Translations under genes and position numbers: made by a program
IMG/VR virus record: IMGVR_UViG_3300017917_003822
Coordinates: 186,001-250,000 of that record
Strand: one strand, 5' to 3'
DNA length: 64,000 nucleotides
Shown here: piece after piece, positions 23,322 through 26,170 of the stretch
Position numbering within the stretch: position 1 is the first letter of the stretch
How the letters are laid out: each line of letters begins with the position of its first letter
The notes under the pieces: generated by a model
Told to the model about the DNA's origin: nothing
Seen by the model: the letters and a program-made list of their open reading frames with translations, nothing else
Databases searched by the model: none

Positions 23322-24110
23322 ATGAGCGAGAGTAAATCTCTATTTAAGGCCTTTATCAGGGTGGTAAAATCCATCTCGGAAAGGGATAATTATTTCCTTG
23401 GTGGATTTGGTGCGGTTGAGGTTGTGAGAGAACCTCTAATAGAGGCCAAAGACAAATCTGAGGTTAAGAAGATATTACTGGAGAGATATCCCCAATTTTT
23501 TACCAACGGTAAAGTCCACGAAAGAGAAACTAAGGATAATGCTCAATTTTTCTATGTTGTAATATACCCTCTATACGAATGGGAGAAAAAACAAATCGAA
23601 GAGGGAGAATGGATATGTGAAAGTTGTGGACATATTCATGAAAATCAATATCTGTCAAAACCAAGAATTAACGAGAGGTTATTTGGAACAGATAAGCTCT
23701 TCTGTAGGAGTGACGAGGATCTTTGTCTGGAGAATTACAAGAAGGAATATTATAAGGATGTAGATCTTCCAGATGATCTAGCATACATCAAAAAAGATAG
23801 TCCAAATTACATCTATAAATGTACGGAGAAAGCAACAGGTAAAAGCTACATAGGTAAAACTAGAAATGCTCCATTCTTTAGATGGTGGAATCACCTAACG
23901 CACTCAAGCAGTCCCTTTGGAATTTATCTAAGACAAACCAAATTGAGTGATTGGACTTTCGAAGTTCTTGAGGAGCTGCCAGGAAATATTGATGAGAGCG
24001 AAGTTTTTAGAATAGAATCTGAGTACATAATGAAATACGATAGCATTCAGAATGGCTATAATACGGTAATTAGTAATAAGAAGGTTCTGGCTGATAACAA
24101 CGATAACTAA
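23322..24110 (+). CDS. GIY-YIG nuclease domain protein with Zn-binding region
   Basis: YIYKC......SYIGKT...RWWNH, E...I..Y.....GYN; CESCG. Confidence 0.7.
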   Translation: MSESKSLFKAFIRVVKSISERDNYFLGGFGAVEVVREPLIEAKDKSEVKKILLERYPQFFTNGKVHERETKDNAQFFYVVIYPLYEWEKKQIEEGEWICESCGHIHENQYLSKPRINERLFGTDKLFCRSDEDLCLENYKKEYYKDVDLPDDLAYIKKDSPNYIYKCTEKATGKSYIGKTRNAPFFRWWNHLTHSSSPFGIYLRQTKLSDWTFEVLEELPGNIDESEVFRIESEYIMKYDSIQNGYNTVISNKKVLADNNDN

Positions 24111-24161
24111 CTTTTTGTAGCTTGTTTCAGTTGCAAATTATTAGCTAAACATGTAAAAATT

Positions 24162-24353
24162 ATGGATAAGTGGAATTACGATAAAAGAGTTAGAGAATTA
24201 TCTCAAAAAATTGAACAGTATAAAATACACGCTAAACGTGAAATTGAAAACAATAAAGTTTGTCATCCAAGCAAAGTGAGAAATAATTCTCAACGATATT
24301 TGGAAATCTGTAAACAAAGGTATAAGGATTTTACAGGTGAGGACTATGAATAA
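24162..24353 (+). CDS. cassette gene 1, hypothetical
   Basis: 63 aa; followed by TTGCTTATAAC core. Confidence 0.65.
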   Translation: MDKWNYDKRVRELSQKIEQYKIHAKREIENNKVCHPSKVRNNSQRYLEICKQRYKDFTGEDYE

Positions 24354-24363
24354 TTTTTATTGC

Positions 24364-24418
24364 TTATAACGTTCCCACGCTTGGCGAAGTGGCGGATGTA
24401 AAGCACTAAATTTTTAAT
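24364..24418 (+). repeat. attC-like half-site A (right arm missing)
   Basis: TTATAAC-GTTCCCACGCTTGGCGAAGTGGCGG...CACTAAATTT; no complementary arm follows. Confidence 0.6.
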
Positions 24419-24428
24419 TAAACAAATT

Positions 24429-24647
24429 ATGAAAAAGAACAAAACTCGAAATATAGACAAACAACTTCAAAAATTGTTATATGAACAATATGGTGAAGAA
24501 TACACTCAATGGTATATGAAAACTTTTGATGTTAAATTATATTTTGATGGAGCGGAAACATCAGATAGAGGTTATTTAACAGATAGAGAGTTTGACGAAT
24601 GGAAAGAAGAAAAATGGAAACAATTTTTGTCCAAGTATGGTTATTAA
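24429..24647 (+). CDS. cassette gene 2, hypothetical
   Basis: 72 aa; followed by ATATAAC core. Confidence 0.65.
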   Translation: MKKNKTRNIDKQLQKLLYEQYGEEYTQWYMKTFDVKLYFDGAETSDRGYLTDREFDEWKEEKWKQFLSKYGY

Positions 24648-24658
24648 AAATTTATTAT

Positions 24659-24791
24659 ATATAACGTTTTCCGTGTATAATAAGTGGCGTACACGATAAA
24701 CCAAGCCACTAAATTTAAAAATTAACTTTAAAATACAAAACAAATGAAAAATTTAAAACTTAGAAGCCATTTTTTATACACGTTGTTATGT
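24659..24791 (+). repeat. attC-like site B
   Basis: TAAC(24662)-GTTTTC-CGTGTATAATAAGTGGC pairs with GCCATTTTTTATACACG-TT-GTTA(24785-88). Confidence 0.8.
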
Positions 24792-25028
24792 GTAGTTTTT
24801 TTAACATCTTGTAATTGTGATAAACAAAAAAAAGAAATTATTATTGAAGAAAATAATCATCAAGAAGATTATTACATTTACAATGATACATTACAAAATA
24901 ATGCAATTCAAGAAAAAAATAATAGTAGCGGTGTAGGTATCACAACAAGTAGTAAATTAGGTGTAGAAGTAACAGAAGGTGTTTATATTAATTCAAGCGG
25001 TGAGTTAGAATTAGGATTTGGTTTGTAA
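24744..25028 (+). CDS. cassette gene 3, putative lipoprotein
   Basis: MKNLKLRSHFLYTLLCVVFLTSC lipobox; start lies inside site B. Confidence 0.7.
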   Translation: MKNLKLRSHFLYTLLCVVFLTSCNCDKQKKEIIIEENNHQEDYYIYNDTLQNNAIQEKNNSSGVGITTSSKLGVEVTEGVYINSSGELELGFGL

Positions 25029-25034
25029 AATTAC

Positions 25035-25157
25035 ACATAACGGTTTGCGTATTGGCGTTGTTGCCAATACTGATGTTAAATTGAAAAACTAAATTTGAAA
25101 TATATGGAAAATGACAATATGAAACAAGAAGGCAATAACGCTAATACGCTGTTATCG
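25035..25157 (+). repeat. attC-like site C
   Basis: TAAC(25038)-GGTTT-GCGTATTGGCGTTGTTGCC pairs with GGCAATAACGCTAATACGC-T-GTTA(25151-54). Confidence 0.8.
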
Positions 25158-25352
25158 GCAGTTGTTGTTCATCCACATCCGATAATTGAAATGCAAATAA
25201 AGAACTTTAAAAAAGATGAAGTTGGCTACATCGCTGAATGTATTTTATACAACAAAGAATTTAAAGAAGTAGAAAGCTCATTCTTTATTGACGAATATAG
25301 AGCCAACGAAATCATTGATTTAATGCAGACGTTTTTGAACAATTGCCGATAA
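25104..25352 (+). CDS. cassette gene 4, hypothetical
   Basis: ATG 25104 or 25119 inside site C; stop codon is the TAA of the terminal core AACAATTGCCGATAA. Confidence 0.65.
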
Positions 25353-25536
25353 AAAATATATTGATAATACTTCATCTATACACACTTTAAGACATTCATC
25401 ATTTACAAATTTACTAGAATCTGGAACAGATTTAAGGATAATTCAAAAAATTGCGGGACATTCAAGTTCCAAAACAACAGAAATCTACACCCATGTTTCG
25501 AATAATATCCTAAATAAAGTAAAACTTCCGATTTAA
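25351..25536 (+). pseudogene. C-terminal fragment of a tyrosine recombinase (XerC/D-integrase family); not in ORF track
   Basis: [61 protein letters not shown]; HxLRH, GH and catalytic Tyr present; in-frame TGA at 25336 and no start codon. Confidence 0.9.
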
Positions 25537-25568
25537 TTTTTTTATGTCGAGATAATTAATTACTTTTG
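25537..25568 (+). promoter_or_regulatory. T-tract/CG-N11/TAnnTTTG promoter
   Basis: CG 25548-49, TACTTTTG 25561-68. Confidence 0.7.
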
Positions 25569-25600
25569 TTTTCTTAATAATCCACTATAAATCATAAAAA

Positions 25601-26170
25601 ATGGGACTAGATATCACGGTTTATAAACCAATTAAAGTAAAGGAGGAGGATTTTCAAAAGATTGAGGATTTTTTAAACATCGAAGACCACCCGGAACTTT
25701 CAGTGTTTTCTGATTTTATATTCGAGAAAGAAAACGAATACTATGATCTTGAAAACGAAGCCAGAGATCTGGGTTACAATCTTGAGGATTTAATCTGGAC
25801 CGGAACATCTTTTGGACCGGAATCTGCTTACACTTTCAAAGATAGTGATGGAAATGATGTTAAAATTATCATCACAAAAACAATCAAGAAAATTGATAAG
25901 TGTATTGCCATCGAGGAGGTTGGGTATCAGAGAAAAGGTGCGAATAAAAAATTCTATGAAGATAAGATATGGGACAGTCCATGTGTTATAGATCAGAAGA
26001 CACTAAACAATCACTGGGAGACTTACTTTTCAAACCAAACCCCCGAGAGCAAAGGTGGATGGGGAAGCGGGGTTGAATATGAACAGGATGATGAGACCAT
26101 GAGAAAAAACTTTAAGAAAAATATCATAGATAAATTCATCGAGGGGGAAACTTTTGTCATATATCATTAG
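25601..26170 (+). CDS. hypothetical protein (MGLD family)
   Basis: MGLDITVY...EVGYQRK. Confidence 0.75.
   Translation: MGLDITVYKPIKVKEEDFQKIEDFLNIEDHPELSVFSDFIFEKENEYYDLENEARDLGYNLEDLIWTGTSFGPESAYTFKDSDGNDVKIIITKTIKKIDKCIAIEEVGYQRKGANKKFYEDKIWDSPCVIDQKTLNNHWETYFSNQTPESKGGWGSGVEYEQDDETMRKNFKKNIIDKFIEGETFVIYH

What the first reader, a model, noticed from the sequence alone, without database searches (positions are those of the whole stretch)
24662..25166. Cassette start codons lie inside the att hairpin, in one fixed frame across the core
Seen: gene 3 starts at 24744 within the loop of site B, and gene 4 at 25104/25119 within the loop of site C. Both read through the right arm in the same frame (ACG TTG TTA TGT and ACG CTG TTA TCG, TLL-C/S), with the G of GTTA at codon position 3. 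The right arm of site B also encodes part of a lipoprotein signal peptide (SHFLYTLLCVVFLTSC). Classical cassettes usually carry the whole ORF between the core and a downstream attC. Inference, two alternatives: (a) crossover at G|TTA, so each att donates an in-frame leader to whichever cassette lands next (N-terminal shuffling); or (b) crossover at TAA|C, so the att sits upstream of its own gene and serves as its translation start, the reverse of classical polarity.
Basis: partly seen in the sequence, partly recalled or inferred. Interest (0 to 1): 0.75.

Follow-up and report, generated by a model that had tools for sequence, protein, structure and literature searches.

The report
Phage integron with upstream att hairpins
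The two hairpins are recombination sites of a decayed integron-like gene-cassette array in a giant phage, and each hairpin belongs to the gene downstream of it, supplying that gene's start codon and first residues, the opposite gene polarity to classical integrons.

Summary
Gene 3 (ATG 24744) and gene 4 (ATG 25104) start in the loops of hairpins B (24662-24788) and C (25038-25154). Both read through the right arm with the G of GTTA at codon position 3.

Alternative (b) is supported. In every independent context found for genes 3 and 4, homology starts at TAACG of the upstream hairpin and stops at TAAC of the next one. Neighbouring genes and downstream hairpins differ.

The window holds a four-gene remnant of a much larger system. 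More than 100 uncultured viral contigs, many 100-460 kb, carry same-strand arrays of up to about 20 cassettes. Each array ends at a conserved attI-like site and a 266-276 aa XerA-like tyrosine recombinase that lacks the IntI-specific domain.

In the window that recombinase is reduced to its last 60 or so codons. The end of cassette 4 (CCGATAA) is fused to TTTATAA inside the gene.

"One fixed frame" does not generalise. Among 99 in-loop starts the G sits at codon position 1, 3 or 2 in 67, 24 and 8 cases. The frame is constant only within a site subfamily.

Start-in-loop is typical of the ~124-nt site class only. Sites of ~88 nt have the start downstream.

No paper describing this family was found in the searchable library.

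The parts
23322..24110 (+). GIY-YIG-type ORF at the left border of the low-GC island. Its stop overlaps GATAACTAAC.
   Evidence: Pfam GIY-YIG E 6e-4, below the curated cut-off. A GIY-YIG/NUMOD3 endonuclease gene lies at the same border in the syntenic locus L007/L008.
24162..24353 (+). Gene 1 (63 aa). It has no intact hairpin upstream and is shared by near-identical phages in other metagenomes.
   Evidence: Contigs of runs X3, X4 and X5 match 23800-24371/2 and then diverge.
24367..24396 (+). Site A remnant: TAAC core (24367-24370) plus a typical left arm (..GCTTGGCGAAGTGGCGG). The right arm is missing. The variable part of the array begins here.
   Evidence: No hairpin was found. The left arm resembles those of L002 sites. 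The population breakpoint lies at 24371/24372.
24429..24647 (+). Gene 2 (72 aa). It also reads TTG TTA TAT across a GTTAT at 24476 with G at codon position 3, but no hairpin closes there.
24662..24788 (+). Site B, an att hairpin of the long class (127 nt). Layout: TAAC, a 6-nt unpaired GTTTTC, the stem, a 77-nt loop holding the gene 3 ATG, the stem, TT, GTTA.
   Evidence: It is almost invariant and travels with gene 3 in four independent contexts.
24744..25028 (+). Gene 3, a 94-aa predicted lipoprotein. The start and signal-peptide n-region lie in the loop, and the h-region is encoded by the right arm, core and flank.
   Evidence: Three other cassettes have lipoprotein leaders built the same way.
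24665..25040 (+). Cassette 3 as a mobile unit: from the C of TAAC at site B to the TAA of TAAC at site C.
   Evidence: Homology limits in alignment A5. GTTATGTGTA (24785-24794) is complementary to TACACATAAC (25032-25041).
25038..25154 (+). Site C, an att hairpin of the long class (117 nt). Layout: TAAC, unpaired GGTT(T), a 19-20-bp stem, a 65-nt loop holding the gene 4 ATG, the stem, GTTA.
   Evidence: Nine pairs show compensatory change. It travels with gene 4.
25104..25352 (+). Gene 4 (82 aa, function unknown). The leader [17 protein letters not shown] is encoded by the loop and right arm. Its stop codon is the TAA of the terminal core.
   Evidence: 29 homologues, most 82 aa with the same leader. 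A homologue outside any array has no hairpin and a different N-terminus.
25041..25352 (+). Cassette 4 as a mobile unit. Its ends TTATCGGCAGTTGTT (25152-25166) and AACAATTGCCGATAA (25338-25352) are complementary at 14 of 15 positions.
   Evidence: Inverted repeat I5. Homology limits in alignments A2 and A3.
25349..25352 (+). Deletion junction. ATAA is shared by the end of cassette 4 (CCGATAA|C) and by ..AAGATTTATAA|AAAATAT inside the recombinase gene.
   Evidence: Contigs of X3 and X4 read ..AGTTGTCAAAAGATTT and then match the window from 25349. The corresponding place in L007 was read.
25351..25536 (+). C-terminal fragment (about 60 codons) of the array's tyrosine recombinase. It contains HxxR and the catalytic Tyr region. 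The N-terminal ~215 codons and the attI-like site are deleted.
   Evidence: Pfam PF00589 positions 129-170 of 172, E 3e-13. NCBIfam Xer and integron-integrase C-terminal models match. 92% identical to L007:12321-12473.

Best explanation
Sites B and C are attC-like recombination hairpins of a phage-borne, integron-like cassette platform. In this window the platform survives only as a remnant without a working recombinase.

A cassette is the unit C-[3-4 extra unpaired nt]-stem-loop-stem-GTTA-[5-6 nt flank]-ORF-[complementary flank]-TAA. The hairpin therefore lies 5' of its own ORF.

In the ~124-nt site class the loop carries the translation start. Possibly it also carries promoter or initiation signals. 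The right arm plus core encode the last 7-8 residues of a 15-25-aa leader.

Cassettes are exchanged by a small XerA-like tyrosine recombinase whose gene lies immediately downstream of the array on the same strand. Exchange occurs within the left core (TAACG, probably TAA|C), between hairpins and a conserved attI-like site (TAAC|TATWWTATATA) 35-70 nt before the recombinase start.

The folding strand is the coding (+) strand. Read on the other strand, the layout is that of a classical integron: the integrase reads away from attI and each att site sits at the distal end of its cassette. The difference is that every ORF is inverted, so it needs signals in or after its own att site.

Shown here: cassette limits, site structure, linkage to the recombinase, strand asymmetry, and decay of the window copy.

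Inferred: single-strand folding, the exact cleavage bond, and promoter activity.
For: - Gene 4: in the window, L002, L003 and L092, homology starts at TAACG of site C and ends at ..TTGCCGAT|AAC. The upstream genes and the next hairpins differ.
- Gene 3: the same holds in the window, L098/99, L100 and L102.
- Family-wide, 342 cassettes from 80+ loci: when the upstream neighbour differs, the upstream site is kept (>70% identity) in 13 of 18 pairs. Three of the five failures are artefacts in which the last site before the recombinase gene was scored as a cassette. When the downstream neighbour differs, the downstream site is kept in 1 of 18 pairs. Mann-Whitney p = 0.002.
- HSPs that include gene body stop at TAA|C 36 times and at G|TTA 3 times.
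- 59 of 333 ORFs use the TAA of the next core as their stop codon.
- The flank after GTTA of site n pairs with the flank before TAAC of site n+1 at 4.8 of 6 positions. Shuffled partners give 2.2 and the flanks of one site give 2.3.
- Arrays end in TAAC+TATWWTATATA with no hairpin, just before the recombinase gene.
- Site density is 0.68/kb upstream of the recombinase, 0.07/kb downstream and 0.05/kb in shuffles.
- Left-minus-right spacer is +3 or +4 in 389 of 440 sites.
- Stem mismatches on the + strand are G.T 696 times and A.C 120 times. 314 sites have more G.T than A.C, against 10 the other way.
- Near-identical phages in other metagenomes diverge from the window exactly after TAACG of site A. 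They rejoin at 25349, inside an intact recombinase gene.
- The recombinase is collinear with XerA (E 6e-47) and is the only conserved enzyme next to the arrays.
Against: - No recombination was observed directly. There are no circular-cassette joints, and the window's own recombinase gene is truncated.
- The cleavage bond cannot be resolved within the invariant TAACG.
- 45 body-containing HSPs begin at the right core GTTA. The same hairpin/leader family precedes unrelated ORFs (17 bodies for one family), and the RNA-ligase gene has different hairpins in L007 and L011 with the break at GTTA. So exchange at, or homologous recombination near, the right core also happens.
- The G.T excess fits an RNA hairpin as well as single-stranded DNA.
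- The recombinase lacks the IntI I2 insertion thought necessary for hairpin recombination (PMC7790495).
- The Bacteroidota -7 box TAnnTTTG is not enriched in loops, so promoter activity is unproven.
Confidence: 0.8

Rival explanations
1. Alternative (a): the main crossover is at G|TTA of the right arm. Each cassette would then carry its att site at its 3' end, as in classical integrons, and donate promoter, start codon and leader to whichever cassette lands behind it.
For: - Leader families such as ..NLNISDV|..QLNIGAV| and MENDNLKxESNNANxLL| are fused in frame to unrelated proteins, with similarity ending exactly at GTTA.
- One site cluster of 17 members sits on 17 unrelated bodies.
- 45 HSPs begin at GTTA.
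- The RNA-ligase gene has different upstream hairpins in L007 and L011.
Against: - When the same ORF is found in new contexts, the upstream hairpin comes with it and the downstream one does not.
- Homology stops at G|TTA only 3 times, against 36 at TAA|C.
- Arrays end at attI without a terminal hairpin.
- Many of the GTTA starts are a shared ~100-nt leader module rather than gene bodies.
- Related att sites on unrelated genes are also the rule in classical chromosomal integrons, so they do not bear on the crossover point.
Confidence: 0.07
2. There is no site-specific cassette recombination. The hairpins would be regulatory RNA/DNA elements (promoter-plus-stem-loop or RNase-processing sites, like PeSLs of T4-type phages), and shuffling would come from homologous recombination between these repeats. 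The neighbouring recombinase would be unrelated.
For: - The strong G.T (G.U) excess on the sense strand.
- Hairpins lie between every pair of small genes in a hyperplastic region of a T4-like-looking genome (RNA ligase, T4_Y16D).
- PeSL precedent (PMC2839356, PMC4122927).
- Hairpin subfamilies are 75-90% identical over >70 nt, long enough for homologous exchange.
Against: - Breakpoints fall at the 4-nt cores rather than being spread through the repeats.
- TAAC/GTTA are invariant while stems vary freely with compensation.
- The cassette-specific flanks are complementary.
- A conserved attI-like motif and the recombinase gene terminate essentially every array.
- The window's deletion joins two ..ATAA motifs.
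Confidence: 0.1
3. The overlap of ORFs with the hairpins is an annotation artefact. True starts would lie downstream of GTTA, and the open frames through the A-rich loops would be compositional.
For: - Loops are A-rich and T-poor, so stops are rare.
- In about 40% of long sites the in-loop ORF ends within 7-50 nt of the core and the main ORF starts downstream.
- Short sites never contain the start.
Against: - Gene 3 and three other cassettes encode lipoprotein signal peptides whose n-region is in the loop.
- Gene 4 has invariant residues directly after the core, with no alternative start before them.
- The leader is in frame with the main ORF in 43 of 70 single-frame sites, against 23 expected.
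- The body frame is open back to the core in 100 of 144 long sites against 26 of 97 short sites.
Confidence: 0.03

Closest known systems
Classical integrons (IntI, attI, attC cassette arrays)
   Same: - One-strand arrays of small, mostly unrelated ORFs are separated by imperfect hairpins of 45-130 nt with ..AAC/GTT.. cores.
- There is a variable, cassette-specific, complementary outer box and an unpaired asymmetric spacer.
- A dedicated Xer-clade tyrosine recombinase sits next to a distinct non-hairpin primary site.
- Read on the minus strand, the recombinase, attI and att polarity are arranged as in class 1 integrons.
- Cassettes move as units bounded at one core.
   Different: - The recombinase is 266-276 aa and lacks about 48 residues where IntI has its specific I2 domain.
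- It scores below NCBIfam integron-integrase cut-offs.
- All ORFs are inverted relative to att polarity, so the att site is 5' of its gene and supplies the start codon and leader. No upstream Pc is possible.
- The unpaired spacer asymmetry is 3-4 nt on the 5' arm.
- The system is carried by large phages rather than bacterial chromosomes: only 4 hits among 185,579 species genomes, all Bacteroidota MAG contigs.
CALINs and integron fragments reported in phage genomes (Qi et al. 2023, PMC9892861)
   Same: attC-type sites and cassettes occur inside phage genomes. The window's array, which lacks a working integrase, is formally CALIN-like.
   Different: - Those are classical attC sites detected with IntegronFinder/HattCI and recombined by IntI1. 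They are sporadic (21 phages) and taken to be acquired from bacteria.
- The family here has its own recombinase, its own site type and inverted gene polarity.
- The one uncultured 'Myoviridae' CALIN of that paper (MW202573) is an unrelated 34.6-kb P22-like genome.
PeSL (promoter-early stem-loop) mobile cassettes of T4-type phages (PMC2839356, PMC4122927)
   Same: Small ORFs in hyperplastic regions of large virulent phages are each preceded by a conserved stem-loop-containing expression motif, with modular shuffling of ORFs between motifs.
   Different: PeSL shuffling is attributed to homologous recombination with no dedicated recombinase. PeSLs have no invariant 4-nt cores, no complementary cassette-end flanks, no attI-like terminal site, and no start codon inside the loop.
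Xer/XerA recombinases acting at dif, and XerCD use of folded single-stranded phage DNA (CTX-type integration; own knowledge)
   Same: The enzyme is collinear with archaeal XerA and bacterial XerC/D. There is precedent for a Xer enzyme without IntI's insertion acting on a folded single strand.
   Different: dif-type sites are 28-bp duplex sites with two 11-bp arms around a 6-8-bp centre. Nothing like that is seen here, and there are no cassette arrays at dif.

Membership tests
Integron (sensu stricto) | An IntI-type integrase with the IntI-specific additional domain (I2 alpha-helix) between the beta-sheet region and box II | tested here: not met
   Profile of 16 intact enzymes against VchIntIA (2a3v): residues 14-177 align to 13-180 and 209-262 to 260-313. 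That leaves 31 aa where IntI has 79. TIGR02249 scores 145-163 bits against a cut-off of 265, in two stretches. The best model is XerA, NF040815.
Integron (sensu stricto) | attC sites: imperfect hairpins with conserved AAC/GTT cores (R''/R'), inner L boxes, an unpaired spacer with strand-specific extra bases, and variable length and sequence | tested here: inconclusive
   440 sites have invariant TAAC/GTTA, stems varying with compensation, lengths of 45-130 nt, and a 3-4-nt excess of unpaired bases on one arm. The classical extrahelical-base pattern and RYYYAAC consensus were not matched, and no attC covariance model was available (Rfam has none).
Integron (sensu stricto) | A primary site attI next to the integrase gene, where the array begins | tested here: met
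   26 of 27 loci listed end the array with ..TAAC|TATWWTATATA 35-70 nt before the recombinase start codon, without a hairpin.
Integron (sensu stricto) | Cassettes are promoterless ORFs followed by their attC and expressed from Pc at the attI end | tested here: not met
   The hairpin is co-inherited with the ORF downstream of it. ORFs read towards attI and the integrase. In ~60% of long sites the start codon lies inside the hairpin.
Integron (sensu stricto) | Recombination of one folded strand (bottom strand) with a single strand exchange at AA|C | not testable with these tools
   Only indirect evidence: + strand G.T 696 against A.C 120 in stems, and breakpoints within TAACG.
CALIN (cluster of attC sites lacking an integrase) | Two or more att sites in array with no functional integrase nearby | tested here: met
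   The window has intact sites B and C plus remnant A. Only the last ~60 codons of the recombinase gene remain. The sites are not classical attC.
PeSL cassettes of T4-type phages | A conserved early promoter plus stem-loop flanking ORFs, shuffled by homologous recombination with no dedicated recombinase | tested here: not met
   A dedicated recombinase and an attI-like site end essentially every array. Breakpoints fall at the 4-nt cores. A sigma70 or Bacteroidota promoter motif was not demonstrated.
Xer/dif or pdif modules | 28-bp duplex sites with two 11-bp recombinase-binding arms around a 6-8-bp central region | not tested
   No dedicated scan for a dif-type site was run. The sites characterised at cassette borders are 45-130-nt hairpins whose two cores lie 40-120 nt apart.

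The most novel reading that the evidence does not exclude
This would be an independently assembled, phage-borne integron. A minimal XerA-like recombinase without IntI's I2 helix recombines the folded sense strand. Its att sites are also expression modules that graft a start codon and a conserved 15-25-residue leader peptide, in a frame fixed per site family, onto whatever ORF they are attached to. The leaders (for example ..ENLNISDV, ..NNANTLL and the lipoprotein h-regions) could be functional tags for export, virion packaging or regulation, rather than by-products of the hairpin.
Probability: 0.3. Interest if true: 0.9.

Novelty: new variant of a known kind. Interest (0 to 1): 0.78.

Why it matters
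- Integrons are regarded as bacterial (recently also archaeal) devices defined by IntI and its I2 domain. Here a structurally parallel cassette platform is native to a widespread group of large uncultured phages, apparently of Bacteroidota, and is run by a much smaller Xer-like enzyme.
- If this enzyme acts on folded hairpins, the I2 insertion is not the only evolutionary route to structure-specific recombination. That can be tested directly with the standard attC x attI conjugation assay.
- The inverted polarity changes the logic of expression. Each cassette brings its own start signals inside its recombination site, and sequence constraints of a DNA hairpin are written into protein N-termini.
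- For phage biology, it gives a mechanism for the rapid turnover of small accessory genes. Near-identical phages from pond, lake, marine and wastewater samples differ exactly between the first att core and the recombinase gene.
- These arrays are a place to look for new anti-defence and host-takeover genes.
- For annotation, genes in such arrays must be allowed to start inside 'intergenic' hairpins.

Tried and rejected
- Rfam and tRNA scans of the window found nothing.
- A nucleotide search of 50,697 phage records found no relative of the island. The nearest recombinases in cultured phages are below 40% identity, in Cellulophaga and Polaribacter phages.
- My first idea was that ACTAAATTT in the loops is the Bacteroidota -7 box TAnnTTTG. 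That motif is not enriched in loops: 0.01 observed against 0.02 shuffled. A recurrent TTGAAACAC..CTTAAAT pattern is present, but its role is unknown.
- Nucleotide-level clustering of cassette bodies gave only 14 pairs, so I moved to protein-level pairs.
- A first tally of HSP ends was dominated by hairpin-only HSPs. I repeated it requiring at least 100 nt of non-site sequence.
- The first G.T count was biased by my finder's rule. I repeated it with a rule symmetric in G.T and A.C.
- Some apparent failures of the upstream-site test were artefacts in which the 'cassette' was the recombinase gene itself.
- Codon-position entropy of leader loops was only weakly coding-like, so I do not rely on it.
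- I considered that the window's deletion derives from the IS605/TnpB element that interrupts the recombinase gene at nearly the same place in L007. The junctions differ by a few bases, and X3/X4 carry an uninterrupted gene there, so this stays open.
- MW202573, a phage CALIN from the literature, is unrelated.
- I did not run complex prediction, because I judged it uninformative for a DNA-binding enzyme.
Full report
**Where the window lies**

The window is bases 186,001-250,000 of a single 270,629-bp contig with 36% G+C. Almost all its genes are small and on the + strand. Its helicase, RNA ligase and metallophosphatase genes look phage-like.

Between about 24,110 and 25,560 the G+C content drops to 22-30%. 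This island holds four small + strand genes, followed by a 51-residue match to the C-terminus of the tyrosine recombinase family (PF00589 positions 129-170 of 172, E 3e-13).

**Checking the observation**

- Site B runs from TAAC (24662-24665) to GTTA (24785-24788). Its arms are 17 nt long and 88% complementary.
- Site C runs from TAAC (25038-25041) to GTTA (25151-25154). Its arms are 19 nt long and 89% complementary.
- Site C folds well beyond shuffled controls as single-stranded DNA (z = -2.8). Site B does not stand out by energy alone (z = -0.3).
- In ten related copies of site C, 9 of the 24 predicted pairs keep pairing through changes on both sides.
- Site B is nearly invariant in four independent contexts.

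Gene 3 starts at 24744 and gene 4 at 25104 (second ATG at 25119), both in the loops. Both cross the core as xxG TTA, with the G at codon position 3.

Gene 3 begins MKNLKLRSHFLYTLLCVVFLTSC. This has a basic n-region, a hydrophobic core and an L-T-S-C lipobox. The n-region is encoded in the loop and the h-region by the right arm, the core and the flank.

Both starts are therefore genuine:

- Gene 3 needs its n-region.
- In gene 4 the invariant residues VVHxHP begin three codons after the core, with no start codon in between.
- The next ATG of gene 4 (25188) is replaced by Leu in divergent homologues.

The site upstream of gene 2 ('site A') is only a left arm with no partner. The three ATAAC..CTAAATTT sites are unique in the 270-kb genome.

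**What the island belongs to**

Gene 4 has 29 homologues, nearly all 82 aa with the same leader. Their contigs carry long one-strand arrays of small genes.

One of these loci, L007, is syntenic with the window. Both have an RNA ligase and a homing-endonuclease gene on the left, and T4-type RNA ligase, metallophosphatase and AAA_33 genes on the right. L007 has about 22 small genes and a same-strand tyrosine recombinase gene at the array's end.

Searching IMG/VR with that recombinase gave 108 viral contigs, many of 100-460 kb, at 57-99% identity. Among 185,579 prokaryotic species genomes there were only four hits, all on Bacteroidota MAG contigs. Cultured phages have nothing closer than 38% identity, in Cellulophaga and Polaribacter phages.

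I wrote a simple scan for TAAC..GTTA hairpins. It found 0.68 sites per kb in the 10 kb upstream of the recombinase genes. The rate was 0.07 per kb downstream and 0.05 per kb in shuffled sequence.

**Anatomy of the sites (440 sites)**

- The cores TAAC and GTTA are invariant by construction of the scan. The neighbouring bases are also conserved: TAAC-G-K-T-T on the left and T-GTTA on the right.
- The left arm has 3 or 4 more unpaired bases than the right arm in 389 of the 440 sites.
- The five or six bases after GTTA of one site are complementary to the bases before TAAC of the next site. The mean is 4.8 of 6, and 159 of 342 are perfect. Shuffled partners give 2.2, and the two flanks of a single site give 2.3. 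So the two ends of each inter-site unit are built to pair, as in a circularised cassette.
- In the window this appears as GTTATGTGTA / TACACATAAC for cassette 3. For cassette 4 it is TTATCGGCAGTTGTT / AACAATTGCCGATAA (I5).
- Site lengths fall into classes of about 45-60, 80-95 and 115-130 nt.
- Counted with a rule symmetric in the two kinds of transition mismatch, stems contain 696 G.T against 120 A.C. 314 sites have more G.T than A.C, against 10 the other way. Base composition predicts equality. The coding strand is therefore the strand selected to fold.

**Which gene owns the hairpin?**

- Gene 4: in the window, L002, L003 and L092, homology begins at TAACG of the upstream site and ends at ..TTGCCGAT|AAC. 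The preceding genes and the following hairpins are unrelated.
- Gene 3: the same holds in the window, L098/L099, L100 and L102.
- Across 342 cassettes I took pairs with homologous proteins but different upstream neighbours. These keep the upstream site in 13 of 18 cases. Three of the five failures are artefacts involving the recombinase gene itself. Pairs with different downstream neighbours keep the downstream site in 1 of 18 cases.
- Alignments that include gene body stop at the left core 36 times and at the right core 3 times.
- 59 of 333 ORFs, gene 4 among them, use the TAA of the next core as their stop codon.
- Every array ends with ..TAAC followed directly by a conserved TATWWTATATA motif 35-70 nt before the recombinase start, with no hairpin. 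That is what insertion at an attI-like site by exchange in the left core would produce.
- Contigs from other metagenomes (runs X3, X4, X5) are near-identical to the window up to 24371/24372, the TAACG of site A. They then carry other hairpins, and rejoin the window at 25349.

**State of the window's copy**

At 25349 the contigs of X3 and X4 read ..AGT TGT CAA AAG ATT T|AT AAA AAA TAT ATT GAT. This is an intact recombinase gene (..SCQKIYKKYID..). The window instead reads ..TTGCCG|ATAAAAAATATATTGAT.

So the end of cassette 4 (CCGATAA|C) has been joined to TTTATAA|A inside the recombinase gene. The attI-like site, about 215 codons of the gene and any cassettes in between are deleted. The shared ATAA fits recombination at a secondary site, and it fits microhomology equally well.

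In L007 an IS605-family OrfB/TnpB element interrupts the same gene within a few bases of this point.

With site A reduced to a half-site, the window holds a decaying remnant. It has two intact cassettes (24665-25040 and 25041-25352) and no enzyme.

**The enzyme**

Intact copies are 266-276 aa. Their best NCBIfam model is the archaeal XerA type, at 176-196 bits, below its cut-off of 220. The integron-integrase model scores 145-163 bits against a cut-off of 265, in two separate stretches.

A profile of 16 sequences is collinear with Pyrococcus XerA (4a8e, E 6e-47). Against Vibrio IntIA (2a3v) it aligns residues 14-177 to 13-180 and 209-262 to 260-313. That leaves 31 residues where IntI has 79.

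The AlphaFold model (pLDDT 83) matches XerA and IntI best. The insertion that defines IntI is considered the innovation that allowed single-strand recombination (PMC7790495). It is absent here.

**The frame claim**

I took the first ATG of the longest ORF in each cassette.

- The start lies inside the site in 92 of 142 sites of 115-135 nt, but in 1 of 92 sites of 80-100 nt. In the shorter sites it lies typically 20-60 nt after GTTA.
- In the long class the main ORF is open back to the core in 100 of 144 cases, against 26 of 97 for short sites.
- Where only one leader frame exists, it matches the main ORF in 43 of 70 cases, against 23 expected by chance.
- In the remaining third, a short leader ORF stops 7-50 nt past the core and the main ORF starts downstream.
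- Among 99 in-loop starts, the G of GTTA is at codon position 1 (GTT = Val) in 67, position 3 (xxG TTA = Leu) in 24 and position 2 in 8.
- Grouped into 51 site clusters, the split is 29, 16 and 6. The frame is constant within all but one cluster.

The frame is thus a property of each site subfamily, not of the system. Sites B and C belong to two different position-3 subfamilies.

**A remnant of alternative (a)**

Site subfamilies carry recognisable leader peptides:

- MKDxKHIxxFNExxENLNISDV|
- ..PQLNIGAV|
- ..DKKLHISDV|
- MENDNLKxESNNANxLL| (the site C type)
- lipoprotein h-regions (the site B type)

These are fused in frame to unrelated proteins, and similarity ends exactly at GTTA. One cluster of 17 sites sits on 17 unrelated bodies.

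The RNA-ligase gene also has different hairpins in L007 and L011, with the break at GTTA. Some of the 45 alignments that begin at GTTA reflect a shared ~100-nt module that follows short sites.

Related att sites on unrelated genes are also the norm in chromosomal integrons, so this says nothing about the usual crossover point. It does leave room for rarer events. These could be exchange on the other strand, or homologous recombination within similar hairpins. Either would swap leaders between genes.

**How it most likely works**

On the minus strand the layout reads recombinase gene (pointing away), attI, then units of the form G|TTA..ORF(reversed)..hairpin..G|TTA. This is the geometry of a classical integron with every ORF inverted.

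I therefore propose that the + strand folds and the enzyme exchanges one strand at 5'-TAA|C. Circular cassettes would be inserted at the attI-like site, next to the recombinase gene.

Because all ORFs read towards attI, no common promoter can serve them. The expression signals must then sit in the loop (long sites) or just after the hairpin (short sites).

- Shown: the cassette limits, the site architecture, the strand bias, the linkage to the enzyme, and the population-level variability.
- Inferred: single-strand folding (an RNA role for the same hairpins is equally compatible with the G.U excess), the cleaved bond, and promoter activity. The Bacteroidota TAnnTTTG box is not enriched in the loops.

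**Comparison with the literature**

Integron fragments and CALINs have been reported in 21 phages. Those have classical attC sites recombined by IntI1 (PMC9892861). The one uncultured example named there, MW202573, is an unrelated 34.6-kb P22-like genome.

PeSL motifs of T4-type phages are the nearest functional analogue in phages, but they have no recombinase and no cores (PMC2839356, PMC4122927).

Five full-text searches found no description of this family. Subscription journals are not covered, so prior description cannot be excluded.

**Verdict**

Alternative (b) is right. The fixed frame is a subfamily trait. The finding is a remnant of an integron-like system that appears undescribed in the searchable literature and is a new variant of a known kind.

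Noticed in passing
L007:10879-12320 (and L008); window 25349-25352: In the syntenic phage L007 the array's recombinase gene is interrupted after ..SCQQIY by an IS605-family OrfB/TnpB element. This lies within a few bases of the point where the window's recombinase gene is truncated. Two independent inactivations have hit the same TTTATAAAAAA stretch.
   Followed up: partly
e.g. L073:6511-6620, L079:7026-7130, L092:9595-9700, L067:3592-3700: A conserved ~100-nt module (tgctctcgtgccgac..tttgaaacacgaaagaaaaac..tatttatatataaa) follows many ~88-nt sites and precedes unrelated ORFs. It may be the promoter/5'UTR equivalent of what long sites carry in their loops.
   Followed up: partly
L019:7985, L020:5742 and 6929, L049:8207, L051:8820, L069:17, L092:8065 and others: Families of att-encoded leader peptides (such as MKDxKHIxxFNExxENLNISDV) are fused in frame to unrelated proteins. 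One site cluster of 17 members precedes 17 non-homologous ORFs.
   Followed up: partly
L091:5001-5258: A gene 4 homologue (70% identical) sits outside any array, directly behind another gene. It has no hairpin and a different 21-residue N-terminus. Homology to the cassette copy starts about 10 nt after GTTATCGG. This may be the non-cassette form of the gene.
   Followed up: partly
window 23800-24372 and 25349-25900: Phage backbone near-identical to the window occurs in pond, freshwater, marine, wastewater and other metagenomes sampled 2018-2025, with different cassette content between the first att core and the recombinase gene.
   Followed up: partly
window 23322-24110; L007:2394-2960; L008:1233-1897: A GIY-YIG or NUMOD3 homing-endonuclease-like gene lies at the left edge of the array, both in the window and in the syntenic loci.
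   Followed up: no
L042:18274-20559; L078:8947-10886; L007:36-1117: Some phages have a second run of the same hairpins away from the recombinase gene. In L007/L011 an RNA-ligase gene of 354 aa is itself flanked by sites.
   Followed up: no
L092:1429-2211; L102:119-823; L005:4882-5073: Most cassette ORFs have no Pfam hit. Among those that do are DNA methyltransferases (N6_N4_Mtase, MethyltransfD12) and a product hitting Pfam 'Sequestin'. This would fit accessory or anti-defence functions.
   Followed up: no
flanks of all sites (positions -8..-6 and +9..+11 from the cores): Beyond the variable 5-nt flanks there is a conserved ATT on the left and AGT on the right. These would pair as A-T, T.G and T-A on the + strand only, extending the outer box to about 12 bp.
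   Followed up: no
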